A DNA stretch of 64,000 nucleotides from IMG/VR virus record IMGVR_UViG_3300010334_000023, positions 124,001 to 188,000 of that record, one strand, 5' to 3'. The notes under the pieces were generated by a model that was not told where the DNA came from, made no database searches, and was given only the letters and a program-made list of their open reading frames with translations. Both the position numbers and the translations under genes were made by a program. Below, piece after piece: positions 24,475 through 45,726 of the stretch; positions within the stretch are counted from its first letter, which is position 1; each line of letters begins with the position of its first letter.

Positions 24475-24609
24475 ATGACTGATGAAAACACACGCGATAA
24501 ACAACAAGAAATCACACAGCCAGACGAGGATGGAACCGTGATGGTATATGGTTTCCTTCAGATTAAAGATGCCAAGACTGGTGAAGTCTTGATAAGCACG
24601 AGGTCGTAA
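24475..24609 (+). CDS. Small 44-aa protein missed by the ORF track (MTDENTRDKQQEITQPDEDGTVMVYGFLQIKDAKTGEVLISTRS)
   Basis: Fills the intergenic gap exactly, follows a late promoter, and resembles the N-terminus of the next gene. Confidence 0.75.
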   Translation: MTDENTRDKQQEITQPDEDGTVMVYGFLQIKDAKTGEVLISTRS

Positions 24610-24612
24610 CGC

Positions 24613-25209: not shown

Positions 25210-25252
25210 TCTACGGTGCTAAATATGCTTACAATCATGGCAGGTGAACGAA

Positions 25253-26020: not shown

Positions 26021-26021
26021 T

Positions 26022-26972
26022 ATGACCTATGTCGCTGGTGGACTGATACAAGCAGCTGATTTTGACGGCTTCTCTGGACCTTTACCGCCCTCACAGGCCT
26101 ATACCAGCCCATCAGCAGCAGCTGATCACATGGCAGCGCTGATTGGCGTAGGCTATGGCGACAGAGGTTATGGTCAGACCAGCACCACTCTGCCAGCTGT
26201 GACAGCGGGACAGATAATCTCGGCTGCGACATGGAATAATCTCTTGAACACCATGGGAACCAGCAACACTCATCAAGGCAGTGGCTTAACCCTGCAGCCA
26301 ACCGTTGCTACAGGCGGTAGGATCATCGCACAGGATGGTAACAATGGCACTGTTAGCATAAGCTCTCTGATCAACACTCTGGACAGCAACAGGCTCAATG
26401 CCAATGTAACCGAAATGACGGTCAGCAGCGTGCTGATCAGCAGCACTAGCACACCATGGGGCGGCGTGATAAATCACGTTTTCACGGTTAATTTTGGCAC
26501 CGAGGATGCGGCTAGGTACTTCTTCAACAGCGGCGGACAGATAAGGTTAAGTGGCGCAAACGTTGGCGGCACCACCCCGGATGCGGCTAGCTGGGCATCA
26601 CTGCTGAGCCAGATGGGAACCATCAAGTTTGGAGCTACTACCACTACCTACACCGGGTCTGGTGGTACTGTGGCCAGCATAGGTTACTATGGAATGACTG
26701 GCAGCAACCAACAGCTGTTCATACACTATGGATCTGGCACGCACTATGCTGGTAATTATTATGCCATACAGGCCTATCGCAGCAGCTACACGGGAGCCAA
26801 TGGCGGCAATGGCAGCCTTTTAACCTTCACTGCTACCTTCAACAACACATCGGGCTATTATTATCATGGTAGCACGGTCAATGGTACTACCACTAGCTAC
26901 GTAGACCAATACAAGGCCACTGGTGTGCTGAGCATCCAGAATCCAAACTTCACGACCACAACACCCCTCTGA
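26022..26972 (+). CDS. Virion structural protein (tail-associated, G/T/S-rich)
   Basis: GYGQT and ARYFFNSGGQIR segments; composition and position at the end of the structural operon. Confidence 0.55.
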   Translation: MTYVAGGLIQAADFDGFSGPLPPSQAYTSPSAAADHMAALIGVGYGDRGYGQTSTTLPAVTAGQIISAATWNNLLNTMGTSNTHQGSGLTLQPTVATGGRIIAQDGNNGTVSISSLINTLDSNRLNANVTEMTVSSVLISSTSTPWGGVINHVFTVNFGTEDAARYFFNSGGQIRLSGANVGGTTPDAASWASLLSQMGTIKFGATTTTYTGSGGTVASIGYYGMTGSNQQLFIHYGSGTHYAGNYYAIQAYRSSYTGANGGNGSLLTFTATFNNTSGYYYHGSTVNGTTTSYVDQYKATGVLSIQNPNFTTTTPL

Positions 26973-26976
26973 TATC

Positions 26977-27005
26977 TTGACACTGTGAGCATTTGCAGCC
27001 ACAAT
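26977..27005 (+). promoter_or_regulatory. Sigma70-type promoter TTGACA-N17-CACAAT for the glycosyltransferase operon
   Basis: Consensus -35, 17-nt spacer, intergenic; GGAG RBS and ATG 27032 downstream. Confidence 0.55.
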
Positions 27006-27031
27006 CGCTAGATAAGCGATTGGAGATCAGC

Positions 27032-27388
27032 ATGGATGAAAGACTAGAGAAAGCCCTGGAATTCAGCAGGTATCGTATCAGCCTTTTCAATCGCAAAGAA
27101 GACCTCAAACTGAGGCTCAAGAACATGCTGCTTCATGCCACAGACGGTGGTATCTTCACCATTGATCAACAGCTCATCACCTTCGTAGAGATGTTGGTCA
27201 GCAAGGGTAGGATGCAGGCTGTGCTGCTTGATGACAACGGTAATCCGATTGAAATCGCTGATCTAGCTCAGTTTGCTGACGACATAATTGGCAAGTATTT
27301 TGAATCGACCAATCTCTATTATGCGGAATATGCCAAGCTTCGCAGTGCCCGCACGGTAAAGAGCATATACGAGTTCGTTGATGACTGA
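27032..27388 (+). CDS. Hypothetical phage protein, first gene of the GT operon
   Basis: GGAG RBS before ATG 27032; overlaps the next gene. Confidence 0.7.
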   Translation: MDERLEKALEFSRYRISLFNRKEDLKLRLKNMLLHATDGGIFTIDQQLITFVEMLVSKGRMQAVLLDDNGNPIEIADLAQFADDIIGKYFESTNLYYAEYAKLRSARTVKSIYEFVDD

Positions 27389-28289
27389 TTATCCCAGAGA
27401 ATTTAGGCTGGATCGCGGTTTCGTGATGTTTGCCTACAACAACTCCAACATAGACTACGCATCGCTGGCATTGGTAAATGCTCTGCTGATCAAGAAAAAC
27501 CTCAAGACCAATGCCGTGGCCCTGATAGCAGATCACAATGCTGTGTATCACCTGGAGTCGCTATACAACACTGAAGTCATCAGCAGGGCTTTTGATCGCA
27601 TCATCATTGACGAGCCCACGGACATCAATGTTGGCAAGCGCAGGTTCCATGATACTAGGTACACAGCGTTTACCGACGGCTATCGCAACACCAATCGCGC
27701 CAGTGTCTATGATTTAAGCCCTTTTGAAGAGACCATGCTGATAGACAGTGACTATCTCATGCTTGACTCTAGCTTTGACATGGTCTGGGGCAGTGTCGAG
27801 GGCATGATGTGCAATAGGCACACCAGAGACTTGGACCACGGTGTAGACAAGTTTGGCTTTGACAATCGCTTCAACGATATGAGCATACCGCTCTATTGGG
27901 CTACAGCAGTCTATTTCCGCAAGACTGACAGGAGCAGGTTGATATTTGAGCTTATGAACTTCATCAAGGAGAACTATGCCTATTATCAGTATCTCTATAG
28001 GTTCAATCACAGCGGCTACTTCCGCAATGACTATGCTCTGAGCATGGCACTGCACATGACCAACAATCTCATTGAGCATGACAACATATCAGCACTGCCA
28101 GTTGACCACATCATGTTCAGCATGGAAAACGATGAGATGCACGGTTTCAAGGATGGATGTTGCTTGATGACCAGTGAGCCCACGCAGGGTGATTTCCGTA
28201 TCCATAACGTTGACTACAACGTGCATGTGATGAACAAACGTGCTATACTGCGACTCAAGGATGACTTCATTGCCTACGCTCTCAGCTGA
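27381..28289 (+). CDS. GT-A fold glycosyltransferase (GT8-like)
   Basis: DxD motif in SPFEETMLIDSDY; YWATAVYFRK and FRNDYA; paralogous to the next gene. Confidence 0.7.
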   Translation: MTDYPREFRLDRGFVMFAYNNSNIDYASLALVNALLIKKNLKTNAVALIADHNAVYHLESLYNTEVISRAFDRIIIDEPTDINVGKRRFHDTRYTAFTDGYRNTNRASVYDLSPFEETMLIDSDYLMLDSSFDMVWGSVEGMMCNRHTRDLDHGVDKFGFDNRFNDMSIPLYWATAVYFRKTDRSRLIFELMNFIKENYAYYQYLYRFNHSGYFRNDYALSMALHMTNNLIEHDNISALPVDHIMFSMENDEMHGFKDGCCLMTSEPTQGDFRIHNVDYNVHVMNKRAILRLKDDFIAYALS

Positions 28290-29151
28290 CATCAACCATA
28301 GACCTCGCGGTTTCTTTACCTTCGCGCAGAACAACGAACGCACGGATTATCTGCGCATGGCCTATGCACTAGCCCTGAGCCTCAAGGTGTCGCAGCAGAG
28401 TGTGCCCTATCTCACTGTTGGCATAACGCCTGGCATGACAGTTCCAGATCAATATGCTTGGGCCTTTGACAATATCATAGAGATTCCTTGGGGAGACCAT
28501 GCGGCAGACAGCAGCTGGAAGCTGGAGAACGAGTGGAAGTCCATATACATGACGCCCTATGAAGAGACTATCAAGCTGGACTGTGACATGCTGTTTTTCA
28601 CAGATCTCGGTAGGATCTGGGATCAGCTGAGCCAAAGAGATTTCGTGATATGTAACCAAGTGTTGAACTACAAGTCAGACGTAATAACCAGCGACGTCTA
28701 TCGCAAGGTATTCACAGACAACCAGCTACCAAATGTCTACACGGCATTCATGTATTTCAAGAAGACCACAGAGACACATGAGATATTTGACTTAGCTAAG
28801 TTCGTTTTCAGGAACTGGGAAACCATGTTCCTGGAGACCATGAAACCAGAAAATCGGCCTAACTATGTCAGCACTGACGTGGTTTTTGCTCTGGTGCTCA
28901 AGCTGTTGGACCTGGACCAACACTGCTATACAGCACGAGCAATACCTACCTTCACGCACATGAAGAGCCAACTGCAGGGATGGGGCACAGGTATCACAGA
29001 AGACTGGACCAAGCACATGCCAGTGTTTTTCAATCCTAGATTGGAATGCAAGATAGGAAATCATCTGCAGTTCCATCCACTGCACTACCATATCAAGGGA
29101 TTCGTAACCGACGAGATATTGGAATATTATGAGCGAGCAGCAGGAAGATAA
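28261..29151 (+). CDS. GT-A fold glycosyltransferase (GT8-like)
   Basis: TPYEETIKLDCDM (DxD), VYTAFMYFKK, STDVVFA, FTHMK; exact start uncertain (28240 or 28261). Confidence 0.7.
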   Translation: MTSLPTLSADINHRPRGFFTFAQNNERTDYLRMAYALALSLKVSQQSVPYLTVGITPGMTVPDQYAWAFDNIIEIPWGDHAADSSWKLENEWKSIYMTPYEETIKLDCDMLFFTDLGRIWDQLSQRDFVICNQVLNYKSDVITSDVYRKVFTDNQLPNVYTAFMYFKKTTETHEIFDLAKFVFRNWETMFLETMKPENRPNYVSTDVVFALVLKLLDLDQHCYTARAIPTFTHMKSQLQGWGTGITEDWTKHMPVFFNPRLECKIGNHLQFHPLHYHIKGFVTDEILEYYERAAGR

Positions 29152-29686
29152 ACAGGCCTGGGTTTGGTATGACAGGGTTACCCTGCAGCTGAAGCATGTG
29201 AGCTTCAATCTGAATGGTCACCAAGGCAATGATCTGGAAAAGATGCCGATGCACTATGACAGCGCATTGGACATCGCCAACGGCAAGAGCAGGCTTTTTG
29301 AATACGAGCTGGTTGATGCGCAGGGAGAGCTAACTGTGCGTTACAAGAGGCACAAGATTCCTTTCAAGAAGTTCTGGCAACTGGTTGATCTCAATATAGA
29401 GAACAAGTTTGATGGATATTTCAACGACGCTGAATCTGCTCGCAGTCCAGTGCAGATATCAGATCTTTCTCCTGCTGGCTTTACCGTTGGTGTGCGTGAT
29501 ATGGTACGCAACATAGTGTTCTATATCACCATGAAGAACGATCCAAACTATCTCATCAAAAAGATCGATCTCTATCCACTTGCCGAGGATGCTGCTAGCA
29601 CCACTGGTATCTTCGTGCCAGTTGATCTTGATGAGCCGTATAGCATATATGTGAAGTATGACGAAGTGAGGTACGATGCTACATGA
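29129..29686 (+). CDS. Hypothetical protein within the GT operon
   Basis: Intact ORF overlapping both neighbours. Confidence 0.6.
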   Translation: MSEQQEDKQAWVWYDRVTLQLKHVSFNLNGHQGNDLEKMPMHYDSALDIANGKSRLFEYELVDAQGELTVRYKRHKIPFKKFWQLVDLNIENKFDGYFNDAESARSPVQISDLSPAGFTVGVRDMVRNIVFYITMKNDPNYLIKKIDLYPLAEDAASTTGIFVPVDLDEPYSIYVKYDEVRYDAT

Positions 29687-30581
29687 GATGAACGAATTCG
29701 ACTTTGTGTTCCTAAGCTATGATGAACCCAATGCCGAGATTCTCTATGCTGAGTTGGTGAACAAGGTACCGTGGGCCAAGCGAGTTCATGGTGTGCGCGG
29801 TTTTGACTCAGCACACAGGGCCTGTGCTGACATAGCTGATACTGATTTCTTCGTGACTGTGGACGGCGATAATCGCGTGCATGACAGCTTCCTCAACACC
29901 AAGATAGAGATAAACAATGGGCAAGAAGACCATGCATGGACATGGGCAGGTCGCAATCACGTTAATGGTTTGGTCTATGGCAATGGTGGACTGAAGCTGT
30001 GGAGCAAACAGTTTGTGCGCAGCATGAACAGCCACGAGAACAGCAACAGTGATGCTGGCAAGGTTGACTTCTGTTGGAACATGAGATACCACGAAGTGTT
30101 TGGCACACACAGCACCAGCATGATCAATGCCAGCCCCTATCAGGCCTGGCGAGCTGGTTATCGCGAAGGCGTGAAGATGAGCCTAGAGACTGGACGCAAG
30201 GTTCCATATCAGGATTTTAGCAGGAAGATCTGGATCTATAATCTCCACAAGCTGCTGATCTGGTGCAGTGTTGGAGCTGACGTGGAGAACGGCATATGGA
30301 GCATGCTGGGTGCTAGGCAGGGCGCACACGACTGCAATCTCACAGATGACGATCACACCAAGATCAGTGACTATGGTTGGTTTGAAGAGAAATGGCACAG
30401 CACCAAGGACTGTGATCCGCAAGCACAGTGCCTCATGCTAGGGCAGCTGCTGAGGCAGAAACTTGGCATAGAGATAGCTGACTTAGATGCTGATCAAAGC
30501 AGATTCCACAAGCGCATATACATAAATCCACCCAGGCCCATGGTCAGCTATGAGCAGATCAAACATCTATCGGCAGTCTGA
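29676..30581 (+). CDS. Glycosyltransferase-like protein (SYDEPN / VDGDN family), paralog 1
   Basis: FLSYDEPNAE...RVHGVRGFDSAHRACA...FVTVDGDN (GT-A-like DxD); YGNGGLKLW; WRAGYREGVKM. Confidence 0.65.
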   Translation: MLHEMNEFDFVFLSYDEPNAEILYAELVNKVPWAKRVHGVRGFDSAHRACADIADTDFFVTVDGDNRVHDSFLNTKIEINNGQEDHAWTWAGRNHVNGLVYGNGGLKLWSKQFVRSMNSHENSNSDAGKVDFCWNMRYHEVFGTHSTSMINASPYQAWRAGYREGVKMSLETGRKVPYQDFSRKIWIYNLHKLLIWCSVGADVENGIWSMLGARQGAHDCNLTDDDHTKISDYGWFEEKWHSTKDCDPQAQCLMLGQLLRQKLGIEIADLDADQSRFHKRIYINPPRPMVSYEQIKHLSAV

Positions 30582-32428
30582 TGTTTGACATCTTTTTCGT
30601 GAGCCGACATCCCAGCGATCGTTCACTTCACTCTGAGTTCTGCAGGCGTTTTCCGGCTGCTATGCTGCTGCGAGGTCAGGACAACGTCTGTGATGTGATC
30701 AACTCTGCGAGGACTCGCAGCCTAACCAGCATGTATTGGTTGGTAACTGATGATGCGATTCTGCCAGATGAAATGGATCTAACTTGGAAACCAGAAACCT
30801 GGGACAGCCACTATCCGCACCATTGGCCAACAGCAGACCAACTTGACGAGTCTGGTAAAGAATTCTCTGGGGCCTATCTCATGCCAAGGTCTTATAGACC
30901 AACCGCTGAAGAGCTATCATCTGGCATACTGCGCGAAGTCAAACATATGACAGGTCATCTGACAGTCAGACCCTATGACATTGTCTTAGCCAGCCGGCAT
31001 AGCAAGAACTATCAGGCATTTGAGGATTTTGCTCTGCGATATCCCAAAGCCAACTATCTGCCAGACCAGACCAGCATTGAATCAGCAGTGGCTGAAAGCA
31101 AGGAGATCTGCCGTACACGCATGTATTGGTTGATCACCGATGATGTGTTCCTACCTGATGAGCTTGATCTCAGCTGGAGACCTCCGGTCTGGGATCGGAT
31201 CTATACACATGTTTGGCCAACGCAGCCTACTTCGGATCCGCAATCATGCGGGTCGTCTGGTGTTTACCTCATTCCATGCAGCGTTGAACGAGATTTCCTC
31301 GATCAGTGCAAGCATGTACCAGCTCCGAGCTGTTCAGTGATACCCTATGATCGCATCATGAGCCTCAGCACCACATCTGATCCCTGTGACAAGGTAGTGC
31401 ATAACAACGATCTTTTTGATGCATGCGTACAAGCCAAGGAGCTAGCTGTCACGGAGATGCATTGGCTGGCGCTGGGAGACATAAACATATTGCCAGATTT
31501 TGATCTCAGCTGGAGACCAGCAGAATGGGACCGTGACTATGTTCACATATGGCCAACCATAGGTCTGGACGGTCAGATAACCTATGAACAGGAAGGTATC
31601 TATCTCATACCAGGTGATCACACGCCTCGAGCTTCTAGGTCTGGAAGCTATCTAGGTCGCAGCAAGACCATGGATCAGCCTGCTGCTATACAGCTGCCAT
31701 TTGACATATTCTTCATCAGCTACGACGAAAGCTATGCTGAAGAAAACTGGCAGGATCTGGTTGAGCGATATCCTAGGGCCAAGAGGGTCCATGGAATCAA
31801 GGGTATACACAACGCACATCGATGCTGCGCCGGTCAGTCGCGTACCAGCATGTTCTATACCGTTGATGCAGACACGGTGTGCAGTTCCGGCTGGGATTTC
31901 AGCTATCGTCCTCCAAGGCACGACAGGGATTATCTACATGTTTGGTACAGTGAGAATCCCGTGAATGGTCTCTGCTATGGCTGGGGCAGCATCAAGCTGT
32001 GGCCCAAGATGGCAGTGCTGGAGTTTGATCAAAACTGGTTGGATTTCACTACTACAGTGGGCAACATCAAGGTAATACCAGAGACCGTAGCCGAGACCAG
32101 ATATAACAGGGATCAGCTCACTACTTGGCGCAGCGCCTTCCGTGAGAGCGTGAAGCTATGCCAGAACGTGGCCATGGGTGAAACTGGAGAAAGCCTGGAT
32201 AGGCTGCTGGTATGGCTGAACGCTGACAGTGCCGCAGACTGGTCTGATGACAGCAGGCAGGGTGCTGCCGATGGCCTGAGATTCTATCAGGAGTCGCAGG
32301 ACTCGTCTGACACACCTCTGACACTGATCAATGATTTTGATTGGCTCGCAGATAGATTCAATAATCGCATTAGAGACCTGGACGACTTTGATCGAGATGA
32401 TCTGCTGGACCTGCTGGGAACGGATTGA
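30581..32428 (+). CDS. Multidomain glycosyltransferase-like protein: three degenerate repeats plus one complete SYDE/VDAD domain
   Basis: Three copies of T.M[YH]WL...D...LP...DL.W.P..WD..Y.H.WPT, then FISYDESYAE...RVHGIKGIHNAH...TVDAD...WRSAFRE. Confidence 0.65.
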   Translation: MFDIFFVSRHPSDRSLHSEFCRRFPAAMLLRGQDNVCDVINSARTRSLTSMYWLVTDDAILPDEMDLTWKPETWDSHYPHHWPTADQLDESGKEFSGAYLMPRSYRPTAEELSSGILREVKHMTGHLTVRPYDIVLASRHSKNYQAFEDFALRYPKANYLPDQTSIESAVAESKEICRTRMYWLITDDVFLPDELDLSWRPPVWDRIYTHVWPTQPTSDPQSCGSSGVYLIPCSVERDFLDQCKHVPAPSCSVIPYDRIMSLSTTSDPCDKVVHNNDLFDACVQAKELAVTEMHWLALGDINILPDFDLSWRPAEWDRDYVHIWPTIGLDGQITYEQEGIYLIPGDHTPRASRSGSYLGRSKTMDQPAAIQLPFDIFFISYDESYAEENWQDLVERYPRAKRVHGIKGIHNAHRCCAGQSRTSMFYTVDADTVCSSGWDFSYRPPRHDRDYLHVWYSENPVNGLCYGWGSIKLWPKMAVLEFDQNWLDFTTTVGNIKVIPETVAETRYNRDQLTTWRSAFRESVKLCQNVAMGETGESLDRLLVWLNADSAADWSDDSRQGAADGLRFYQESQDSSDTPLTLINDFDWLADRFNNRIRDLDDFDRDDLLDLLGTD

Positions 32429-32429
32429 G

Positions 32430-33119
32430 ATGTATGACATAGTTTTTATCAGCTACGAAGAATCAAATGCTGCTGCTAATTGGCAGCTGCTCAAGGACAG
32501 ATTTCCTGCTGCCAAGAGGTTGCATGGCATCACAGGGCTTCATCAAGCACACATCACGGCTGCTAACATGGCCCAGACTGACATGTTTTATGTGGTAGAT
32601 GGTGATGCTGTGATTGAACCCGACTTTGTTTTTGACCACGTGGTTCCGGAACATCAACTGGATCATGTGCATGTGTTCCGTGCTAGGAATCCAATCAATG
32701 ACCTAGTCTACGGCTACGGTGCTGTAAAGCTACTGCCAGTGGCCGAGGTCAAGCGATTGGTGGAGAGAGACTTCAAACCGGACATGACCAGCAGCATCAA
32801 TCGCAAGTACAAGATCATACATCAGCTATCAAATGTCACAGCGTTTAACACTGATCCCTACAACACTTGGCGCAGCGCTTTCAGAGAATGTGCCAAGCTG
32901 GCCAGCGGCGTCATAGATGGGCAGGTTAACATCGAGACAGAGCAGAGACTAGAGATTTGGTGCACCAAAGGCAGTGGCAGGGACTATGGCTATTGGTGTC
33001 TGCTTGGTGCGCAGGCCGGCAGGCAGTTTGGCCTGGACAGCCGAGGCACTGATCAGCTGATGAAGATCAACGATTGGACATGGCTTCGCCAGAGATACGA
33101 GGAGAGCGGACTGAAATGA
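32430..33119 (+). CDS. Glycosyltransferase-like protein (SYEE / VDGD family), paralog 3
   Basis: MYDIVFISYEESNA...RLHGITGLHQAH...VVDGDA...YGYGAVKL...WRSAFRECAKL. Confidence 0.65.
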   Translation: MYDIVFISYEESNAAANWQLLKDRFPAAKRLHGITGLHQAHITAANMAQTDMFYVVDGDAVIEPDFVFDHVVPEHQLDHVHVFRARNPINDLVYGYGAVKLLPVAEVKRLVERDFKPDMTSSINRKYKIIHQLSNVTAFNTDPYNTWRSAFRECAKLASGVIDGQVNIETEQRLEIWCTKGSGRDYGYWCLLGAQAGRQFGLDSRGTDQLMKINDWTWLRQRYEESGLK

Positions 33120-33985
33120 GCGAGTATTGGCCCAGAGATATAGATGCTTTCTACATCAGCTATGACGAACCAAACTGCGAAGACAACTGGGCCAGGGTGC
33201 TGGACATGCTACCTCAAGCCAAGCGCACGCACGGAGTCAAGGGATTTGATGCTGCACACAAGGCCTGTGCCGAGGCCAGCCAGACAGAGAGATTCCTCAC
33301 CATTGATGGTGATAACTGGCTGTTGGCTGACGGATTAGACACAAAGCTAGACGACACTGGAATGGAAGACGTGGTCTTCAGCTTCAAGAGCAGGAATGCG
33401 GTCAATGGTCTTGAATATGGTAACGGAGGTCTAAAATGCTGGCGCAGAGATGTGTTGCTGGCTAGCAACACACATGAGAGCAGCGACAACACAGACTTCT
33501 GCTGGGATCTGCGCTACTATCAAGTTGATGTGTTGAGCAGCATTGGCGTTAACAACGCCACGCCTTACCAGGCTTGGCGAGCCGGTTATCGCGAAGGCGT
33601 GAAGATGAGCTATGTGAATGGCAAACCCATGTCTGATCCAATCGCCGATCGCAAGCTGATAGCTCACAGTAACCATAGCAAGCTGCAGATATGGATGACC
33701 TTGGGCAGGGACGTGACCAACGGAGCATGGGCCATGCTGGGAGCAAGGCAAGGCTTCTGCGATCTCTATAGCGGTACCATAGGCAACACTGTGATCAATG
33801 ACTATGATTGGTTCGCAGAGAAATGGAAGAAGATCCAACACCTCAACACAGATGCTGCGCTATCTCAGCATGCTCGCAGACTTCGAGACGAGTTTGATTT
33901 TTTCGTTCCGGAACTTGATCAACTGACCAGCCAGTGGTTCAAGAAAACCTATGTGCATCCGCAGCGACGAGGTCTGATGCTATGA
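33116..33985 (+). CDS. Glycosyltransferase-like protein (SYDEPN / IDGDN family), paralog 4
   Basis: YISYDEPNCE...HGVKGFDAAHKACA...TIDGDN...YGNGGLKCW...WRAGYREGVKM; ATGA overlap with upstream stop. Confidence 0.65.
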   Translation: MSEYWPRDIDAFYISYDEPNCEDNWARVLDMLPQAKRTHGVKGFDAAHKACAEASQTERFLTIDGDNWLLADGLDTKLDDTGMEDVVFSFKSRNAVNGLEYGNGGLKCWRRDVLLASNTHESSDNTDFCWDLRYYQVDVLSSIGVNNATPYQAWRAGYREGVKMSYVNGKPMSDPIADRKLIAHSNHSKLQIWMTLGRDVTNGAWAMLGARQGFCDLYSGTIGNTVINDYDWFAEKWKKIQHLNTDAALSQHARRLRDEFDFFVPELDQLTSQWFKKTYVHPQRRGLML

Positions 33986-34743
33986 TCAAGTCTCCTCCTA
34001 GGAGATTGATACGATCGCTGCTGGGACACCTAGACCAGGAGGGTCTGTCTCTGCCTCTGTTGCGGTTCATGCTAGGCAACTTTGACAGCTATGATGATCA
34101 CTTGGTCATGCTCAAGCAGGTCATGGCAGTGTCGCAGCTGGATACTGAGCTGGTTGGCAAAGATGCATGGAGCGAAGGTCAGCTGCTGAGCAAGCATTGG
34201 CTGTGCGAACAGCTATCAAACCTGGACAAGAACCTCGGAGAGATATGGATAGCCTGTGGATGGATAGGATCTCTGGCTTTGATGATCGACTGTTATAGAC
34301 CACATCTGCGTTTCAAGAGCCTGCGCAGCTTTGATATTGACAGTCGCTGCGCTGATCTAGCTGACGCGCTTAACAAGCGCATGCTGCTGGATGATTGGCG
34401 TTTCAAGGCCAGCACTGCTGACGTGAACGATCTCACCTACGATGACCACCTGTGGCTCACCAGCAGGTCACAGAATAGGACTGAGCGCATGGTTGGAACC
34501 GCAGACACCGTGATCAATACCAGCTGTGAACATCTAGCTGATTTTGACTTTTGGTTTGGTCGCATACCAACCGGAAAGCTCGTGGTGCTTCAATGTAGCA
34601 ATCACGACAGCTATGCCGGACATGTCAATCACATGGACAGCATGACTGAGCTGGCCATGAGAGCTCGATGCCGCCGCATCATGTACAAGGGCACGCTGGA
34701 CTGCGGGCCCTACCAGCGCCACATGTTGATAGGAGTGAAATGA
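33982..34743 (+). CDS. Class I SAM-dependent methyltransferase-like protein
   Basis: IACGWIG (motif I-like), RSFDID, DTVINTSCEH, GKLVVLQ; ATGA overlap. Confidence 0.65.
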   Translation: MIKSPPRRLIRSLLGHLDQEGLSLPLLRFMLGNFDSYDDHLVMLKQVMAVSQLDTELVGKDAWSEGQLLSKHWLCEQLSNLDKNLGEIWIACGWIGSLALMIDCYRPHLRFKSLRSFDIDSRCADLADALNKRMLLDDWRFKASTADVNDLTYDDHLWLTSRSQNRTERMVGTADTVINTSCEHLADFDFWFGRIPTGKLVVLQCSNHDSYAGHVNHMDSMTELAMRARCRRIMYKGTLDCGPYQRHMLIGVK

Positions 34744-36020
34744 ACATGCGATTGAACGACAAGGAACTGCTGGTCAAGATCAAGAACGATAACCGTTTGC
34801 TTGAATTTAGGCATCTACTGACAGCTGAGGACCGAGCAACATTTGCAGACGTGTACAAGTGGTCGCCTGCTCTCATCGGCATATTAGCCAGTGACCATAG
34901 CTTCTTCGCACTGCTCAACAGGTTAAATCCAAACGATCGCAAAGCGATTGGGTTAGTCTGCGTTTGGTCTCCAGAGTTGATAGGAATATTGGCCAGCGAC
35001 CAGAGCGGAATCTTTGCGCTGCTGAAAAGGTTAGATCAGACCGATCGCAAAGCGGTTGGGTCAGTCTGTGCTTGGTCTCCGGAGTTGATAGGAATATTAG
35101 CCAGCGATTACAGCATCTTTGTGCTGCTTAACAAGCTAGATCAGACCGATCGCAGAGCTCTAGCGTCAGTCTGTGATTGGTCTTCCGCACTAATTGGTAT
35201 CATGACCAAGAACGAACATGCACCGCTATCTTGGTTGAATAAGCTCAGCCGAAGCGAACTTGATGGTTGCCGAGATGTCTGGAACTGGCCCATTTATATT
35301 CTAGACAGGCTCTATGTTGAACCTCAGCACATCTTGCCCTTCTATTACATGTGGGACCTAGTTGCTGATCATGCCGAGTTCATCAAGAACTATTTCCAAA
35401 TAAACGATAACCAACTATATGACAAAAACCACATGATAGATGCTTGGTCGCGAGGACAGGTCAACAGCAAGGCTTGGCTATGCGCCACGGCTGCTATACT
35501 TGGCATCAAACTTGGCAAAACCTGGGTACTCTGCGGATGGCTAGGAACGTTGAGCTATTTTATGTTGGTACGTAGGCAACAGCTGGGAATCACACACATA
35601 CGTAGCTTTGACATAAACCCCGATTGCTGCCAACTAGCTGATATACTAAACAAGAATTTTGTCAAGGATGGGTGGAAGTTCAAAGCCACAACACTTGATG
35701 TCAACAGTCTGTCATATGACAATTTTTGTTATCAGACAGTGAAGCACGACGGTACCTTGATAAATGCTCTCGGATCAGCTGATACCATCATTAACACCAG
35801 CTGCGATCACATGGGAGAAGATAAGACCTGGTGGGATCGCATACCAAATGGTAAGTTGGTAATACTACAGAACAATGATTGGCATGAGAATGACCAACAC
35901 AACAATAGCGTGAAGGATTTAAGTGAGTTCAAGAGACATTATCCAATGAGCGAATTGCTTTATGAAGGGGAACTAGACTGTATATTGTATACGAGATTCA
36001 TGCTCATAGGACGCAAATGA
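34740..36020 (+). CDS. Class I methyltransferase-like paralog with N-terminal tandem helical repeats
   Basis: VLCGWLG, RSFDIN, DTIINTSCDH, GKLVILQ; AGGAG RBS and ATGA overlap at 34740. Confidence 0.65.
   Translation: MNMRLNDKELLVKIKNDNRLLEFRHLLTAEDRATFADVYKWSPALIGILASDHSFFALLNRLNPNDRKAIGLVCVWSPELIGILASDQSGIFALLKRLDQTDRKAVGSVCAWSPELIGILASDYSIFVLLNKLDQTDRRALASVCDWSSALIGIMTKNEHAPLSWLNKLSRSELDGCRDVWNWPIYILDRLYVEPQHILPFYYMWDLVADHAEFIKNYFQINDNQLYDKNHMIDAWSRGQVNSKAWLCATAAILGIKLGKTWVLCGWLGTLSYFMLVRRQQLGITHIRSFDINPDCCQLADILNKNFVKDGWKFKATTLDVNSLSYDNFCYQTVKHDGTLINALGSADTIINTSCDHMGEDKTWWDRIPNGKLVILQNNDWHENDQHNNSVKDLSEFKRHYPMSELLYEGELDCILYTRFMLIGRK
34860..35205 (+). repeat. Intragenic tandem repeat of 105-108 bp (35-36 aa), about three copies
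   Basis: Units start at 34905, 35013 and 35118: F.LL.[RK]L...DR[KR]A...VC.WS..LIGI. Confidence 0.85.
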
Positions 36021-36262
36021 TCACAGACCTAACTCTGCTATCAACAAGACAGCTGCAGACCGAAGCAGCTCGTGCCCTGTCAGCTGGTGATGGTTTTGGG
36101 AATCATGACTTGGTGAGATTCAACAAGGCAGCACATCATGACAGCCATGCTTGGTATCGCGCGGTGATAGAATGGTACGTGAGCGTTCACGGTGATCTGC
36201 CCAGCAGGGTTGGTCCAGGCATGACAGTGAAGCTGCTGGTGGAGGATGAACATGATCTATGA
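36017..36262 (+). CDS. Small hypothetical protein
   Basis: ATGA overlap upstream; overlaps the radical-SAM gene downstream. Confidence 0.6.
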   Translation: MITDLTLLSTRQLQTEAARALSAGDGFGNHDLVRFNKAAHHDSHAWYRAVIEWYVSVHGDLPSRVGPGMTVKLLVEDEHDL

Positions 36263-37352
36263 TTACTCTGAGATTACTAGCGTGCACCTCGAACTTACCA
36301 GCAAGTGCAATGCCAGCTGTCCCATGTGCGCACGCAACAAGTTTGGCGGGCCAGAGAATGAGTTCCTGCCTCAAGCAGAACTGAGCCTGACTGATATACA
36401 GCGCATCATGCCCGAGGCATTCGTGAGGCAGCTGAGCAGGCTCTACATGTGCGGCAACTATGGAGATCCCATCGTGGCCAATGACATGCTGGAAGTCTAT
36501 CAGTGGCTGCGCAAGGTCAATCCCAGCATCAAGCTGGGACTGCACACCAATGGTGGTGCCAGGACTCCCACATGGTGGAGCAATCTGGGCATTGTGCTCA
36601 GTGCCAAGGGCGATTACGTGAAGTTTGGCATAGATGGCTTGGAGGATACCAACCACATCTATAGGCGCGGTACCAACTGGTCCAAGATCATGGACAATGC
36701 CAAGGCCTTCATAGCTGCAGGCGGTATTGCCCAGTGGGAATACATCGTGTTCAAGCACAACGAACATCAGGTGGATGAAGCCCGTGCGCTGAGCGAGCAG
36801 CTGGGCTTCGCACAGTTCCGCACCAAGAAGACAGGTCGCTTCTTCAGCAACACTAGGTTACAAGGCAAGGACAGCCAAGAGGTATGGAACCGCAATGGCA
36901 TGGTGGAGTATCTCTTGGAGAAACCAACCAACGAGCTCTATCACAATGACAGCTTGATCAAGGAACAGAGCCTGGTGGACCGCTTTGGCAGCATGCAGGC
37001 CTACGTGGATCAAACCTGCGTGAAGTGCAAGGTTGGCGAGGAAAAGAGCCTGTACATCTCAGCAGAAGGTCTGGCATTTCCTTGCTGTTGGACGGCTAAC
37101 CAGCTGTATGTTTGGTATTGGCCCCACAAGCAGAGCGAGATGTGGACGCTGCTGGATCATGACACTCACAACGTGAACGCCCTGGAAAACACACTAGAAT
37201 CTATAATAAATGGTCCATATTTCAATAAGATAGCTGATAGCTGGTCAAAACCCAGCATCAGTGATGGCAAGCTGAGAGTATGTGCCAAAACCTGCGGAAC
37301 TGGGTTCGATCAGTTCGCTAGCCAATTCACGGAAGCTGTAAATAGATCATGA
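36246..37352 (+). CDS. Radical SAM protein with C-terminal SPASM/twitch-like Cys domain
   Basis: CNASCPMC (CX3CX2C), GNYGDP, HTNGG, GIDGL; C-terminal CKV...YISAEG.AFPCC...CAKTC. Confidence 0.9.
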   Translation: MNMIYDYSEITSVHLELTSKCNASCPMCARNKFGGPENEFLPQAELSLTDIQRIMPEAFVRQLSRLYMCGNYGDPIVANDMLEVYQWLRKVNPSIKLGLHTNGGARTPTWWSNLGIVLSAKGDYVKFGIDGLEDTNHIYRRGTNWSKIMDNAKAFIAAGGIAQWEYIVFKHNEHQVDEARALSEQLGFAQFRTKKTGRFFSNTRLQGKDSQEVWNRNGMVEYLLEKPTNELYHNDSLIKEQSLVDRFGSMQAYVDQTCVKCKVGEEKSLYISAEGLAFPCCWTANQLYVWYWPHKQSEMWTLLDHDTHNVNALENTLESIINGPYFNKIADSWSKPSISDGKLRVCAKTCGTGFDQFASQFTEAVNRS

Positions 37353-38743
37353 CCAACCAATTACCAAGTGACACTTTCTGCGCTCTACCCTGGGTGCATC
37401 TCAGCAGCCGACCAGATGGAACCATGCGCGTCTGCTGCACAGCCAACGCCAGCAGCGTGCAGGATCCAGACAGCACCAAGAAGCTGAGCGGTGGACAGAT
37501 AGGCGTGCTGCGCACTGCTGATGGCACTCCTGCTAACCTCAACAACACCACGCTGATGGACGCATGGAACAATGATTACATGCGCAACGTGCGCAAGATG
37601 ATGCTCAGGGGCGAACAGCCTCCCAGCTGTGTGAAATGCTACAAGGAAGAATCTTCTGGTGTGCAGAGCAAGCGCAACTGGGAGACTCGCTACTGGGTTG
37701 AGCAGCTGGGATTGGATGACATCATAGGTGATACCACCGAGGATGGCGAAGTCAGCCCGAGAATACGCTATCTTGATCTGCGCCTGGGCAGCAAGTGCCA
37801 GCTGGCCTGCGTGATGTGTAGCCCGCATGACAGCAGCGGTTGGATCAAGGAATGGACAGAAATCTATCCACAGATAACCAATGACCGACTCAAGCAGAGC
37901 TGGGGCTGGGCTGACAAAGGCAAGCAGCACGGCGCTAGCTACAACTGGCATCTCAACAATCCTGTTTTCTGGGATCAGCTCTACGATCAGATACCTCACA
38001 TGAAGCAGCTGTATTTCGCAGGCGGTGAGAGCACCATCATCGAAGAACACTACACGCTGCTGGAGGAGGTCATACGCCGCGGCTATGCCCCGCAGATAGA
38101 GCTTAGGTACAACAGCAATGCAGTTGAGCTGCCACAGCGTCTGTTCGACTGCTGGAGCCAGTTCCGAGAAGTCAAGTTCCACTTCAGCGTGGACTGCATA
38201 GGTGCCAAGAATGAATATATTCGCTATCCCAGCAACTGGGATAACATGGTCACTCACATGCATCTGTTGGATCAGACTCCCAACATCATAGTGACCACTG
38301 CTGTCACGGTAATGGCACTCAACATCTATTACCTGCCAGACGTGATCAAGTGGAAGCTCACGCAAGGGTTCGTGAAGTTCAACGAATGGCCCAGCGGCGG
38401 TGGCATGATCAACTGGCATCTAGCCTATTGGCCTCCTCAGCTCAACGTCAAGGTGCTGCCCAAGTGGGCCAAACAGATGGTGCGAGCCAAGTTTGAAGAG
38501 CTGTTCGTTTGGTTGGAAGATAATTGGCAGCTGTGCACCGGACTGCCAGAAGGCATGGACAAACACACCGTGCTGAACACTGGATACGGTATAAAGAGAT
38601 TACGCAGCCTATTGGATTTCATGGACAAGGAAGATTGGAGCGAGCGCATGCCTGAGCTCAGGGAATGGATACGAGTCCTTGACAAGACACGCGGATTGGA
38701 TTTCAAAGCCACTTTCCCTGAGATGAGTGGGCTCTTAGATTGA
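37349..38743 (+). CDS. Radical SAM protein with N-terminal twitch/SPASM-like domain
   Basis: N-terminal FCALPW...DG.MRVCC...CVKC; core CQLACVMC, FAGGE, YNSN, FSVD. Confidence 0.9.
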   Translation: MTNQLPSDTFCALPWVHLSSRPDGTMRVCCTANASSVQDPDSTKKLSGGQIGVLRTADGTPANLNNTTLMDAWNNDYMRNVRKMMLRGEQPPSCVKCYKEESSGVQSKRNWETRYWVEQLGLDDIIGDTTEDGEVSPRIRYLDLRLGSKCQLACVMCSPHDSSGWIKEWTEIYPQITNDRLKQSWGWADKGKQHGASYNWHLNNPVFWDQLYDQIPHMKQLYFAGGESTIIEEHYTLLEEVIRRGYAPQIELRYNSNAVELPQRLFDCWSQFREVKFHFSVDCIGAKNEYIRYPSNWDNMVTHMHLLDQTPNIIVTTAVTVMALNIYYLPDVIKWKLTQGFVKFNEWPSGGGMINWHLAYWPPQLNVKVLPKWAKQMVRAKFEELFVWLEDNWQLCTGLPEGMDKHTVLNTGYGIKRLRSLLDFMDKEDWSERMPELREWIRVLDKTRGLDFKATFPEMSGLLD

Positions 38744-38777
38744 GGTAAACGATCATGCAATTTGGACTGCCTGGAAC

Positions 38778-38785
38778 CATAAATA
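38778..38785 (+). promoter_or_regulatory. Late promoter CATAAATA
   Basis: Intergenic, upstream of ATG 38815. Confidence 0.6.
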
Positions 38786-38814
38786 GTAGCGTAAGTTCAC
38801 ATGGGATCACTGTA

Positions 38815-39183
38815 ATGGCAAGTTCCCCCAAGAAGCCAGTTGATAAAGCCGCTGATGCGGTCTGGGAAGACATATTCAACAATCTTACCATTGAGAACGA
38901 ACCTCCCACTAGATACATCAAGAGCGTGATCATACAGACCAAAGACGGGTCAGTGCTCAAGGTAAGTGGTCGAAGCTTTGCTGAGATCATAGAGCAAGAA
39001 CGCCATCTCTCTCCTGGACAGAGCGAGATATACAGCTGCAGGATGACCATCAATTTTCCCAAGCTGCGTGCGGATGTGGAAACATGGTGCGGTGATCTGT
39101 TTACCGAGTTAAACACATCTGACAGCTACAAGGTGACGGTTAAATCCAAGCGCAAAGCTGCCAAGAAGACAAAGCATGATTGA
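38815..39183 (+). CDS. Hypothetical protein
   Basis: ATG after late promoter; basic C-terminus. Confidence 0.6.
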   Translation: MASSPKKPVDKAADAVWEDIFNNLTIENEPPTRYIKSVIIQTKDGSVLKVSGRSFAEIIEQERHLSPGQSEIYSCRMTINFPKLRADVETWCGDLFTELNTSDSYKVTVKSKRKAAKKTKHD

Positions 39184-45652: not shown

Positions 45653-45671
45653 TGTGTACCTCCAATGAACC

Positions 45672-45699: not shown

Positions 45700-45726
45700 C
45701 CACTAAGCTGACGCCCTGTGAGTTAT

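What the first reader, a model, noticed from the sequence alone, without database searches (positions are those of the whole stretch)
27032..38743. Thirteen-gene tailoring operon: six GT-like, two methyltransferase and two radical-SAM genes
Seen: 11.7 kb of overlapping or abutting genes, with two GT8-like paralogs, four SYDE/DxD paralogs, two methyltransferase paralogs, two Fe-S-rich radical-SAM enzymes and three unknowns, placed right after the fibre genes. It has its own sigma70-type promoter (26977) and an internal late motif (37339). Inference: a biosynthetic cluster that builds and chemically edits a glycan. The target could be virion proteins, a sugar chain extended on the modified DNA base, or the host surface. 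None of the proteins has an obvious membrane anchor, which favours a cytoplasmic target.
Basis: partly seen in the sequence, partly recalled or inferred. Interest (0 to 1): 0.78.

Follow-up and report, generated by a model that had tools for sequence, protein, structure and literature searches.

The report
Phage glycan-building operon beside tail fibres
A giant freshwater phage carries a tightly packed operon of previously unannotated sugar-transferring, methylating and radical-chemistry enzymes just after its tail-fibre genes; the same module recurs in hundreds of uncultured huge phages and probably decorates the virion with a variable sugar coat.

Summary
Thirteen abutting or overlapping + strand genes fill 27032-38743. 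The paralogue sets are real. Predicted folds and profiles confirm two GT8-like genes, four GT-A ("SYDE"/DGD) genes, two class I SAM methyltransferases and two radical-SAM enzymes. Ten of the 13 proteins have no significant Pfam, NCBIfam or PHROG match.

The module sits in a 216-kb fragment (about 42% complete) of an uncultured freshwater huge phage. In 80 related viral loci the order fibre-like gene, g01, g02, g03, (g04), g05 is conserved. The part behind it varies: 1-5 SYDE transferases, 0-3 methyltransferases and 0-5 twitch-domain radical-SAM genes, in 18 combinations across 49 loci. Ralstonia phage RsoM2USA is the only cultured carrier.

A conserved -35 TTGAC supports a promoter in front of g01. 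The "late motif" at 37339 could not be verified.

The best reading is a soluble module that builds and tailors a glycan, most likely on tail-fibre-type virion proteins. That acceptor is inferred, not shown. A DNA-base acceptor is disfavoured, because complete carrier genomes lack FolE, ThyA-family or TET genes. Remodelling of a host envelope glycan stays open. No glycan has been demonstrated.

The parts
24613..26972 (+). Context: three fibre-like genes, u2 (24613-25209), u3 (25244-26020) and u4 (26022-26972; 25% Ser+Thr), directly upstream of the operon. They are the candidate acceptors.
   Evidence: u3 matches the PHROG 'tail fiber protein' family at 1.5e-11. Tara relatives carry a PF07484 Collar protein upstream. 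A u4/u3-like gene precedes g01 in relatives.
26977..27005 (+). Sigma-70-type promoter-like site, TTGACA-17-CACAAT, in the only intergenic gap.
   Evidence: 10 of 12 matches. TTGAC is invariant in 17 of 17 relatives, with a variable spacer.
27002..27022 (+). Inverted repeat CAATCGC-N7-GCGATTG. It overlaps the -10 element and ends at the ribosome-binding site. It could be a 5' UTR hairpin or an operator.
   Evidence: 78.6% of cells are paired, against 22-40% in slid controls; 4 pairs show changes on both sides. RNAalifold found no consensus structure.
27032..27388 (+). g01, 118 aa. First gene of the unit; possibly a tail-fibre-assembly-like adaptor.
   Evidence: No Pfam or NCBIfam hit. Atlas search: virus-only family, with a proxy model resembling DUF4376/Caudo_TAP at TM 0.58-0.64. 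Present in 52 of 53 loci.
27381..28289 (+). g02, GT8-like glycosyltransferase (DSD motif).
   Evidence: Paralogue of g03. The joint family profile hits glycogenin. Present in 53 of 53 loci.
28261..29151 (+). g03, GT8-like glycosyltransferase (DCD motif). It is the most conserved gene of the module.
   Evidence: 906 homologues, none with a Pfam domain. Glycogenin alignment through strand 1 and DxD. Atlas GT8 clusters at TM about 0.7.
29129..29686 (+). g04, 185 aa, unknown function. Fast-evolving and virus-only; a size-matched gene occupies this slot in relatives.
   Evidence: No family hit. Atlas search shows a viral family, with a low-confidence model. 25% identical to the L002 gene in the same slot.
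29676..30581 (+). g05, SYDE-family GT-A glycosyltransferase (DGD). It is the core copy.
   Evidence: 43% identical to g08. Present in every locus that extends far enough.
30581..32428 (+). g06, 615 aa: three degenerate half-modules followed by one intact SYDE GT-A module.
32430..33119 (+). g07, short SYDE-family GT-A glycosyltransferase.
33116..33985 (+). g08, SYDE-family GT-A glycosyltransferase. This is the protein that was modelled.
   Evidence: AF2 pLDDT 93. Foldseek hits RmlT, SunS, TarS and BcsA. VIA Z 10.7-10.3 to B4GALNT1, ThuS and STIV A197. AFDB hits GT2-like domains. S15, E18 and D64-G65-D66 are invariant.
33982..34743 (+). g09, class I SAM-dependent methyltransferase.
   Evidence: AF2 pLDDT 92. 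470 PDB matches at E<=1e-3, NodS at the top. Swiss-Prot neighbours include the RebM sugar O-methyltransferase and NodS.
34740..36020 (+). g10: four to five repeats of about 36 aa (WSPELIGILASD) followed by a methyltransferase domain paralogous to g09.
36017..36262 (+). g11, 81 aa, accessory domain or subunit of g12.
   Evidence: Conserved along its full length, has no Cys, and is fused in frame to g12 in L028. The family is small, 31 representatives.
36246..37352 (+). g12, radical SAM enzyme with a C-terminal SPASM-like Cys cluster.
   Evidence: PF04055 at 35.5 bits, PF13186 at 18.5 bits. CNASCPMC at residue 21.
37349..38743 (+). g13, radical SAM enzyme with an N-terminal twitch domain.
   Evidence: NF033640 at 411 bits (cut-off 170). 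PF13186 at 25.8 bits. CQLACVMC at residue 150. Three paralogues lie elsewhere in the genome.
38755..39183 (+). d1, 142 aa, unknown function. A conserved gene that marks the downstream border of the variable cassette; thyX follows it.

Best explanation
The region is a soluble, phage-encoded module that assembles and tailors a glycan.

Proposed mechanism:
- The two GT8-like enzymes (g02, g03) and the core SYDE GT-A enzyme (g05) start and extend a sugar chain from host nucleotide-sugars.
- The extra SYDE copies (g06 module 4, g07, g08) add further residues.
- The two methyltransferases (g09, g10) methylate the sugars.
- The two radical-SAM enzymes (g12 with its g11 domain, and g13) carry out radical editing such as oxidation, epimerisation, dehydration or C-C/C-S bond formation.

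The most likely acceptor is the tail-fibre-type virion protein encoded immediately upstream, with g01 as a fibre-assembly-like adaptor. The gene content behind g05 differs between related phages in the way O-antigen or capsule loci differ, so the product is probably a lineage-specific sugar coat on the adsorption apparatus.

Shown here: the enzyme folds and motifs, the operon structure, the conservation and the variability. Inferred: the order of reactions, the donor sugars, the chemistry of the radical-SAM steps, and the acceptor.
For: Enzyme identities.

Linkage. The order g01-g02-g03-(g04)-g05, followed by SYDE, methyltransferase and radical-SAM genes, is kept in RsoM2USA, in a 493-kb contig, in Tara marine contigs and in 80 IMG/VR loci. 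g02 is present in 53 of 53 loci, g01 in 52 of 53 and u4 in 43 of 53. Across 49 loci there are 18 different accessory gene contents.

A fibre-like gene precedes g01 even where the wider context differs: after the tail sheath in L053 and L057, and after PhoH in L063, L065, L067 and L072.

The radical-SAM genes of a second cluster beside this phage's own tail sheath have their nearest relatives (50-66% identity) inside SYDE-linked clusters elsewhere.

An NDP-sugar 4,6-dehydratase/epimerase lies next to the module in RsoM2USA and in G004.

Cellular homologues sit in glycan loci alongside GT2, GT4 and GT-C genes.

The homologues of the giant protein and of neighbouring structural proteins are abundant virion proteins in RsoM2USA, whereas the enzymes are not among its major virion bands (PMC8504454). 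XacN1, which groups with RsoM2USA in three marker-gene trees, has at least two virion glycoproteins (PMC5852040).

No membrane segments are predicted.
Against: - No glycan, donor or acceptor has been demonstrated for any member of these families.
- Adjacency to fibre genes may be inherited gene order only. In close relatives the module is equally constantly followed by d1 and thyX.
- A conserved sigma-70-type promoter, and terminators in distant relatives, separate the module from the fibre genes.
- The bacterial homologues lie in envelope-glycan-like loci, which fits a host-surface target equally well.
- XacN1 has virion glycoproteins but lacks this module.
- The 216-kb fragment encodes no nucleotide-sugar enzymes.
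- The g01 assignment rests on a proxy model at TM about 0.6.
Confidence: 0.45

Rival explanations
1. The module remodels a host envelope glycan (LPS core, O-antigen, capsule or a glycoprotein precursor) from the cytoplasmic face during infection. This could block superinfection or stop progeny phage from sticking to debris.
For: Cellular homologues of the SYDE, methyltransferase and radical-SAM families sit in Bdellovibrionota loci with three GT2 genes, an FAD amine oxidase and a PMT_2/GT-C-like membrane protein. In Tateyamaria the SYDE gene sits beside a GT4/GT1 gene. Peripheral glycosyltransferases of O-antigen pathways need no membrane helix (general knowledge). The conserved sigma-70-type promoter is compatible with host-polymerase transcription, separate from the fibre genes.
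Against: There is no flippase, polymerase, initiating phosphoglycosyltransferase or any membrane protein in the module. The module is present in every locus of a large, presumably lytic huge-phage clade, and always behind a fibre-like gene. Hosts of this clade are probably diverse, whereas the core enzymes are 45-75% identical.
Confidence: 0.2
2. The transferases extend a sugar chain on a modified DNA base of the phage (for example a 7-deazaguanine or a hydroxymethylpyrimidine) as an anti-restriction measure.
For: Phage GT-A enzymes do glycosylate DNA (bioRxiv 10.1101/2023.12.21.572611). The window carries GTP cyclohydrolase I (54318-55004) and a QueE-like Fe-S protein (51208-52119). thyX and a P-loop kinase follow the module.
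Against: The complete carrier genome G002 (607 kb) has no FolE and no ThyA-family gene, and only sub-threshold TET-like hits. RsoM2USA has no FolE or TET. No single base-precursor pathway is shared by the carrier genomes searched. The structural neighbours of the SYDE model are GT2-type enzymes, and JGT does not appear. Six transferases plus up to five radical-SAM genes is far beyond known DNA-sugar pathways. The cellular homologues lie in glycan loci.
Confidence: 0.1
3. The radical-SAM enzymes do not edit sugars. They act directly on virion proteins (cross-links, epimerisation, Cys/Ser oxidation), and the transferases glycosylate the same proteins independently. The module would then be a combined protein-maturation unit.
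For: SPASM/twitch radical-SAM enzymes are mostly protein or peptide maturases; the NCBIfam neighbours of g12 are maturases. Four further radical-SAM genes lie directly downstream of the 1362-aa tail sheath gene. g11 behaves as a small substrate-recognition-like domain fused to g12 in L028. Complete relatives carry up to 22 radical-SAM genes.
Against: No recognition-element or precursor family was detected for g11. Twitch enzymes such as BtrN act on sugars (general knowledge). Radical-SAM genes co-vary with the transferases, not with a particular structural gene.
Confidence: 0.15
4. The module makes a free glycosylated small molecule or a RiPP-like peptide, not a conjugate on the virion, the DNA or the envelope.
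For: Radical-SAM/SPASM enzymes combined with methyltransferases and glycosyltransferases are a common natural-product gene set. A small ORF (g11) precedes g12.
Against: g11 is conserved end to end with no leader/core pattern, has no Cys, and is fused to g12 in one genome. There is no transporter, protease or scaffold gene. The core of the module in most relatives is transferases only.
Confidence: 0.05

Closest known systems
Mycobacteriophage virion glycosylation (Freeman et al. 2023, Cell Host Microbe; cited from PMC12619734; details from my own knowledge)
   Same: Phage-encoded soluble glycosyltransferases lie next to structural genes and decorate virion proteins. A Che8 glycosyltransferase appears among the GT-A structural neighbours of the SYDE model (E 1.9e-3).
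   Different: The enzyme families are different. There are no radical-SAM genes. The known acceptors are the capsid and tail tube, not fibres. Here no glycan has yet been shown.
Giant-virus glycan clusters (chlorovirus capsid glycans, mimivirus fibril glycosylation; review PMC9614988 listed, not read)
   Same: Virus-encoded, host-independent sets of GT-A transferases plus methyltransferases build lineage-specific, methylated glycans on surface fibrils or capsids. Many giant-virus glycosyltransferases are weak structural neighbours.
   Different: Those are eukaryotic viruses that also encode nucleotide-sugar synthesis. Radical-SAM tailoring is not part of those clusters as far as I know.
Glycogenin / GT8 retaining glycosyltransferases
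   Same: g02 and g03 share strand 1 (FVTLATN-like) and the DxD segment with glycogenin-1 and -2. GT8 clusters are the nearest named fold neighbours.
   Different: The Pfam GT8 model does not detect them. Only the first 110 or so residues align. Self-glucosylation and the retaining mechanism were not tested.
GT2-type GT-A transferases acting on proteins, peptides or teichoic acids (SunS/ThuS, RmlT, TarS/TarP, ppGalNAc-T)
   Same: They are the best structural matches of the SYDE N-domain and share a DxD motif at the same strand end.
   Different: Sequence scores stay below the Pfam thresholds (13 bits). SYDE has its own invariant motifs (S-Y-D-E, HG..G...AH, NGLxYGNGG) and a helical C-domain (residues 150-289) with no named match.
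NF033640 N-terminal-twitch radical SAM family and SPASM maturases
   Same: g13 is a full-length member (411 bits). g12 is a SPASM-type relative.
   Different: I found no characterised member of NF033640. Tandem arrays of up to five copies beside glycosyltransferases, in phages, have not been described in the papers I searched.
JGT-like DNA-hypermodifying phage GT-A enzymes (Pyle et al.)
   Same: GT-A fold, phage-encoded, sometimes several transferases act in series.
   Different: Those are linked to a 5mC dioxygenase or to ThyA-like hydroxymethylases. This module is not, and JGT is not among its structural neighbours.

Membership tests
GT8 (Pfam PF01501 / CAZy GT8) for g02, g03 | Match to the family model above its gathering score | tested here: not met
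   No PF01501 hit at E<=0.1 in hmmscan and none at E<=1 in the whole record.
GT8 (Pfam PF01501 / CAZy GT8) for g02, g03 | N-terminal nucleotide-binding strand and DxD motif aligned with a solved GT8 | tested here: met
   The family profile aligns residues 10-116 to glycogenin-2 residues 3-116. LDaDmLff lies over LDADTLVL. E 3.4e-4, and 19 glycogenin sequences are hit.
GT8 (Pfam PF01501 / CAZy GT8) for g02, g03 | GT-A fold over the whole domain, with a C-terminal His metal ligand | tested here: inconclusive
   Only a proxy Atlas model was compared (TM 0.69-0.71 to GT8 clusters). H233 in THMK is nearly invariant, but it was not aligned to a solved structure.
GT-A fold glycosyltransferase (GT2-like) for g05, g06 module 4, g07, g08 | GT-A (nucleotide-diphospho-sugar transferase) fold | tested here: met
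   AF2 pLDDT 93. Foldseek probability 0.99 to RmlT and SunS. VIA Z 10.7 over 141 residues. AFDB hits GT2-like domains. The same fold is shared with IspD/MobA nucleotidyltransferases at Z 9-10.
GT-A fold glycosyltransferase (GT2-like) for g05, g06 module 4, g07, g08 | Conserved DxD metal/nucleotide-sugar motif | tested here: met
   D64-G65-D66 are invariant in 37 sequences. The motif is kept in g05, g07, g08 and g06 module 4, and is reduced to TDD or GD in g06 modules 1-3.
GT-A fold glycosyltransferase (GT2-like) for g05, g06 module 4, g07, g08 | Match to the Pfam GT2 models above threshold | tested here: not met
   g07 scores 13.2-13.7 bits, against cut-offs of 23.3 and 27. The other copies have no hit.
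Class I SAM-dependent methyltransferase for g09, g10 | Rossmann-like seven-strand methyltransferase fold | tested here: met
   AF2 pLDDT 92. 470 PDB chains at E<=1e-3, with NodS, TleD and PsoF at the top. Swiss-Prot neighbours are all methyltransferases.
Class I SAM-dependent methyltransferase for g09, g10 | Gly-rich motif I and an acidic residue after strand 2 | tested here: met
   G93-W94 (CGWxGxL) and S116-F117-D118 (FDID) are invariant in 33 sequences. Their assignment to motifs I and II is by position in the model.
Radical SAM superfamily for g12, g13 | CxxxCxxC cluster motif and a model match above the cut-off | tested here: met
   CNASCPMC in g12 and CQLACVMC in g13. PF04055 at 35.5 bits against a cut-off of 29.5 for g12. 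NF033640 at 411 bits against 170 for g13.
SPASM/twitch accessory Fe-S domain | PF13186 match above the cut-off | tested here: met
   g13: 25.8 bits against 21.5, N-terminal residues 11-98. g12: 18.5 bits, below the cut-off, with six C-terminal Cys, so g12 is inconclusive.
Phage virion-glycosylation system | A glycan covalently attached to virion proteins and dependent on the phage transferases | not testable with these tools
   Only context is available: adjacency to fibre-like genes and glycoproteins in XacN1, the phage that groups with RsoM2USA.
DNA-hypermodifying glycosyltransferase pathway | Co-occurrence with an enzyme that makes the acceptor base (5mC dioxygenase, ThyA-like hydroxymethylase, 7-deazaguanine genes) | tested here: not met
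   G002 (100% complete) lacks FolE and ThyA, and its TET-like hits are below threshold. RsoM2USA lacks FolE and TET.
RiPP maturation cassette | A precursor peptide with a conserved leader and a variable core next to the radical-SAM maturase | tested here: not met
   g11 is conserved over its whole length in 13 distinct homologues, has no Cys, and is fused to g12 in L028.
Seroconversion (Gtr-type) or O-antigen assembly locus | Membrane components (flippase, GT-C, polymerase, initiating transferase) | tested here: not met
   No hydrophobic segment reaches 1.5 on a 19-residue Kyte-Doolittle scan in any of the 13 proteins.

The most novel reading that the evidence does not exclude
Huge phages of this clade carry a previously undescribed virion-maturation system. 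Two unannotated glycosyltransferase families build a glycan on the tail fibres (and perhaps on the sheath and the giant baseplate protein). Arrays of N-terminal-twitch radical-SAM enzymes, up to 22 radical-SAM genes per genome, then edit that glycan or cross-link it to the protein by radical chemistry. The result would be a hypervariable, serotype-like surface that governs adsorption or protects the adsorption apparatus.
Probability: 0.25. Interest if true: 0.85.

Novelty: new variant of a known kind. Interest (0 to 1): 0.62.

Why it matters
Glycosylation of virion proteins is documented in very few phages.

- This is a compact, highly conserved yet combinatorially variable enzyme module, found in at least 266 viral loci from fresh water, sea water and soil.
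- It is made almost entirely of families with no Pfam, NCBIfam or PHROG name.
- It is coupled to an unusual expansion of radical-SAM enzymes.

If the acceptor is the adsorption apparatus, the module would add a glycan layer to phage host recognition and would explain part of the 'dark' gene content of huge phages. It would also give functions to two large orphan glycosyltransferase families (4380 and 906 database clusters) and to the uncharacterised NF033640 radical-SAM family. One cultured phage, RsoM2USA, makes the question testable at the bench.

Tried and rejected
- Family scans. Pfam, NCBIfam and PHROG gave nothing significant for 10 of the 13 proteins.
- DNA search. Megablast of the whole region against 50,697 phage records found nothing.
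- Solved structures by sequence. PDB searches were empty or spurious for the SYDE family, the methyltransferase family and g13.
- Late motif. The 'late motif' could not be substantiated: TATAAATA and GTAAATAG each occur once in the window, at chance level.
- Hairpin upstream of g01. RNAalifold gave no consensus. A hand-specified helix has only moderate support.
- RiPP reading. g11 as a precursor peptide was rejected.
- DNA-base reading. It was tested through co-occurrence of FolE, ThyA and TET and was not supported.
- Nucleotide-sugar genes. They were sought in the phage's own fragment and not found, but the fragment is only about 42% complete.
- Literature. Searches for this module, or for radical-SAM genes in jumbo phages, found no description. 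The 'moraphage' paper reports four core putative glycosyltransferase orthogroups in another aquatic lineage, but I could not link them to this module.
- Metatranscriptomes. Contigs cover the fibre genes and g01-g05 alike, so they neither confirm the promoter nor exclude DNA carry-over.

Full report
**What is there.** The window is bases 124001-188000 of a single 216,498-bp viral record. The record is linear, and CheckV estimates it to be about 42% complete. Between 27032 and 38743 the + strand carries 13 genes with no gap larger than a few bases. After refining the starts, several junctions are ATGA overlaps (g07/g08, g08/g09, g09/g10). Others overlap by 8-29 bases. The only true intergenic gap is 26973-27031, in front of g01.

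Upstream lie:
- a gp25-like baseplate protein (9499-9951);
- a gp5-like hub protein with a lysozyme domain (6547-9480);
- an 1134-aa baseplate wedge protein;
- a 3701-aa protein (13361-24466);
- three fibre-like genes, u2, u3 and u4.

Downstream lie a conserved 142-aa gene (d1), thyX, a P-loop kinase, a nucleotidyltransferase-like gene and a YHYH protein.

**Paralogues and enzyme identities.** g02~g03 match at 22% identity and E 2e-10. g05, the C-terminal part of g06, g07 and g08 match at 30-43%. g09 matches the C-terminal part of g10 at 40%.

Pfam, NCBIfam and PHROG recognise only the two radical-SAM genes, so I used profiles and structure prediction for the rest.

- *g02 and g03.* A profile of the family hits 19 glycogenin sequences in the PDB, best E 3.4e-4. 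The alignment runs through the first strand and the DxD motif. The Atlas search places GT8 clusters as the nearest named neighbours. They are therefore GT8-like by remote homology, but the Pfam GT8 model does not detect them.
- *The "SYDE" family (g05, g06, g07, g08).* A 37-sequence alignment of the family gave an AlphaFold model of g08 with pLDDT 93. Residues 1-146 form a GT-A domain. Foldseek gives probability 0.99 to RmlT, SunS/ThuS, TarS and BcsA. VIA-align gives Z 10.7-10.3 to B4GALNT1, ThuS and STIV A197. AlphaFold DB gives GT2-like domains. Nucleotidyltransferases of the same fold score only slightly lower. The invariant D-G-D at the strand end favours a glycosyltransferase. Residues 150-289 form a helical domain without a named match.
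- *g06.* It consists of three degenerate half-modules that have lost the SYDE, HG..AH and NGLxYGxGG motifs, followed by one intact module.
- *g09 and g10.* The g09 model (pLDDT 92) is a class I SAM methyltransferase. Its closest reviewed neighbours include two sugar methyltransferases, RebM and NodS, but many others score alike.
- *g12.* It passes the Pfam radical-SAM threshold and has a C-terminal SPASM-like cysteine set.
- *g13.* It is a full-length member of NF033640, the N-terminal-twitch radical-SAM family, at 411 bits.
- *Membrane segments.* None of the 13 proteins has a candidate membrane helix.

**The three 'unknowns'.**
- g01 belongs to a virus-only family. Its proxy model resembles DUF4376/Caudo_TAP tail-fibre-assembly domains at TM 0.58-0.64. 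This is a lead only.
- g04 is a fast-evolving virus-only protein.
- g11 is conserved over its whole length, has no cysteine, and is fused in frame to g12 in one complete 518-kb relative. It is therefore an accessory domain of that enzyme, not a precursor peptide. Its family is small, 31 representatives.

**Relatives.** tblastn against 50,697 phage records finds the SYDE and g03 families in a single cultured phage, Ralstonia phage RsoM2USA. There, gp354 to gp347 are g01, g02, g03, a g04-sized gene, g05/g08, a g13-like radical-SAM gene, g07 and g09. This series follows the giant structural protein gp361 and a u3/u4-like gene, with an NDP-sugar 4,6-dehydratase/epimerase (gp358) between them.

The protein database holds 4380 SYDE, 906 g03-like and 743 g09-like clusters. 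All are 'hypothetical' and none has a Pfam domain.

A scan of IMG/VR with the g03 profile found 266 loci; I analysed 80.
- Among 53 loci with enough upstream sequence, g02 is present in 53, g01 in 52 and u4 in 43.
- All 49 loci with at least 8 kb downstream have 1-5 SYDE genes.
- 40 of the 49 have 1-5 g13-type genes, 20 have 1-3 methyltransferases and 19 have a g12-type gene.
- This amounts to 18 different combinations.

The minimal form is g01-g05 plus one short SYDE gene, followed by d1 and thyX. Tara Ocean contigs carry the same core behind a tail-collar protein, followed by up to five radical-SAM genes.

The module therefore has a conserved core and a hypervariable tailoring cassette inserted between g05 and d1. 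The window holds one of the fullest versions.

**Position relative to structural genes.** In other sub-lineages the wider context differs. In L053 and L057 the module follows the tail sheath gene. In L063, L065, L067 and L072 it follows PhoH. In each case a gene with the u3-like fibre N-domain lies directly in front of g01.

This phage also has a second cluster of four radical-SAM genes directly downstream of its 1362-aa tail sheath gene. Their nearest relatives (50-66% identity) sit inside SYDE-linked clusters in other genomes. In L053 and L057 the sheath, a gene of that second cluster and the transferase module are contiguous. The two clusters therefore probably belong to one system.

**Cellular homologues.** A scan of 185,579 species genomes found phage contigs binned into MAGs, but also genuine chromosomal loci.
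- In Bdellovibrionota, SYDE genes lie with g13-, g12- and g10-like genes among three GT2 genes, an FAD amine oxidase, a QueC-like protein and a PMT_2/GT-C-like membrane protein.
- In Rhodobacterales isolates a single SYDE gene follows a GT4/GT1 gene.

This independently ties the orphan families to glycan synthesis.

**Which acceptor?** A modified DNA base was tested by co-occurrence. The window does carry GTP cyclohydrolase I and a QueE-like gene. However, the complete carrier G002 (607 kb) has no FolE, no ThyA-family gene and no TET above threshold. RsoM2USA has no FolE or TET. The structural neighbours of the SYDE model also do not include the base-J glucosyltransferase that typifies DNA-modifying phage GT-A enzymes.

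A host-envelope acceptor cannot be excluded. Peripheral transferases need no membrane helix, and the bacterial homologues lie in envelope-type loci.

The virion-fibre reading is favoured by three observations:
- a fibre-like gene is constantly present in front of g01;
- nucleotide-sugar enzymes lie near the module in RsoM2USA and G004;
- XacN1, which groups with RsoM2USA in three marker-gene trees, has virion glycoproteins.

XacN1 itself lacks the module, so that last point is weak. In RsoM2USA the giant protein and its neighbours are abundant virion proteins, while the enzymes are not among the major virion bands.

I put the virion reading at 0.45, host envelope at 0.2, direct protein modification by the radical-SAM enzymes at 0.15, DNA at 0.1 and a free metabolite at 0.05.

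**Regulatory claims.** TTGACA-17-CACAAT at 26977-27005 is the best consensus match in the region, although such matches are not enriched overall. In 17 relatives whose g01 is 55-75% identical, TTGAC is invariant at the same distance from the start codon while the spacer varies. A CACAAT-like -10 element follows. More distant relatives have a terminator hairpin and/or a TATAAT at this position.

This supports a transcription-unit boundary and a promoter in front of g01.

An inverted repeat (27002-27022) overlaps the -10 element. Its arms pair in 78.6% of cells, against 22-40% in slid controls. The 'late motif' at 37339 could not be substantiated.

Two lake metatranscriptomes contain short 99-100% identical contigs across both the fibre genes and g01-g05. 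DNA carry-over is not excluded.

**Novelty.** I found no paper describing this module or its families. It is a new variant of a known kind: virus-encoded glycosylation machinery. What sets it apart is two orphan transferase families, a combinatorial tailoring cassette and arrays of twitch-domain radical-SAM enzymes. All functional statements beyond fold and family are inference.

Noticed in passing
G000:C1:80255-89582 (locus L003 4255-13582, - strand), outside the window: A second cluster with four radical-SAM genes (389, 375, 438 and 454 aa; three are g13 paralogues) lies directly downstream of a 1362-aa tail sheath gene. Their nearest relatives sit in SYDE-linked clusters of other genomes.
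   Followed up: partly
Relatives G001 (518 kb), G002 (607 kb), G003 (453 kb), G004 (425 kb): There is a very large expansion of radical-SAM genes in complete relatives: 22, 13, 6 and 3 PF04055 matches, arranged in arrays (for example about ten between 87 and 101 kb of G001). The phage's own 216-kb fragment has five, plus g13, which PF04055 misses.
   Followed up: partly
window 51208-52119 (-) and 54318-55004 (-): A Fer4_12/QueE-like Fe-S protein and GTP cyclohydrolase I suggest 7-deazaguanine synthesis. It is not linked to the module in complete relatives.
   Followed up: partly
window 13361-24466 (+): The 3701-aa protein has no Pfam domain. It shares a segment of about 160 aa (32% identity) with the enlarged tail sheath, which suggests a common decoration domain. 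Its RsoM2USA homologue gp361 is an abundant virion protein.
   Followed up: no
L028 (G001), the g11/g12 homologue: g11 and g12 form one open reading frame in this relative. This gene fusion links the 81-aa protein to the radical-SAM enzyme. The g11 motif is also repeated six times in a 2990-aa database protein (P0365).
   Followed up: partly
window 27002-27022 (+): A conserved inverted repeat overlaps the -10 element and ends at the ribosome-binding site of g01. Its arms differ between relatives but stay complementary.
   Followed up: partly
window 34932-35400 (+), N-terminal part of g10: Four to five tandem repeats of about 36 aa (WSPELIGILASD...) precede the methyltransferase domain. Their function is unknown.
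   Followed up: no
window 44378-46989 (-): A DUF2201 metallopeptidase/VWA protein sits next to a MoxR-like AAA ATPase. This pairing is known from cellular genomes; here it lies in the phage.
   Followed up: no
L116/L172, L151 (Bdellovibrionota chromosomes): Predatory bacteria carry a chromosomal glycan locus that combines SYDE transferases, N-twitch radical-SAM genes, the g09-type methyltransferase, GT2 genes, an FAD amine oxidase and a GT-C-like protein. It may be the cellular counterpart or the source of the phage module.
   Followed up: partly
window 24500-30400; runs X11, X19: The phage recurs in freshwater and lake metagenomes from 2017 to 2023. Two lake metatranscriptome libraries contain 99-100% identical short contigs over the fibre genes and g01-g05.
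   Followed up: partly
window 40755-41144 (+) and 39866-40339 (+): A short nucleotidyltransferase-like protein (NMNAT-type, weak match) and an APS-kinase-like P-loop kinase follow thyX. Their roles are unknown.
   Followed up: no
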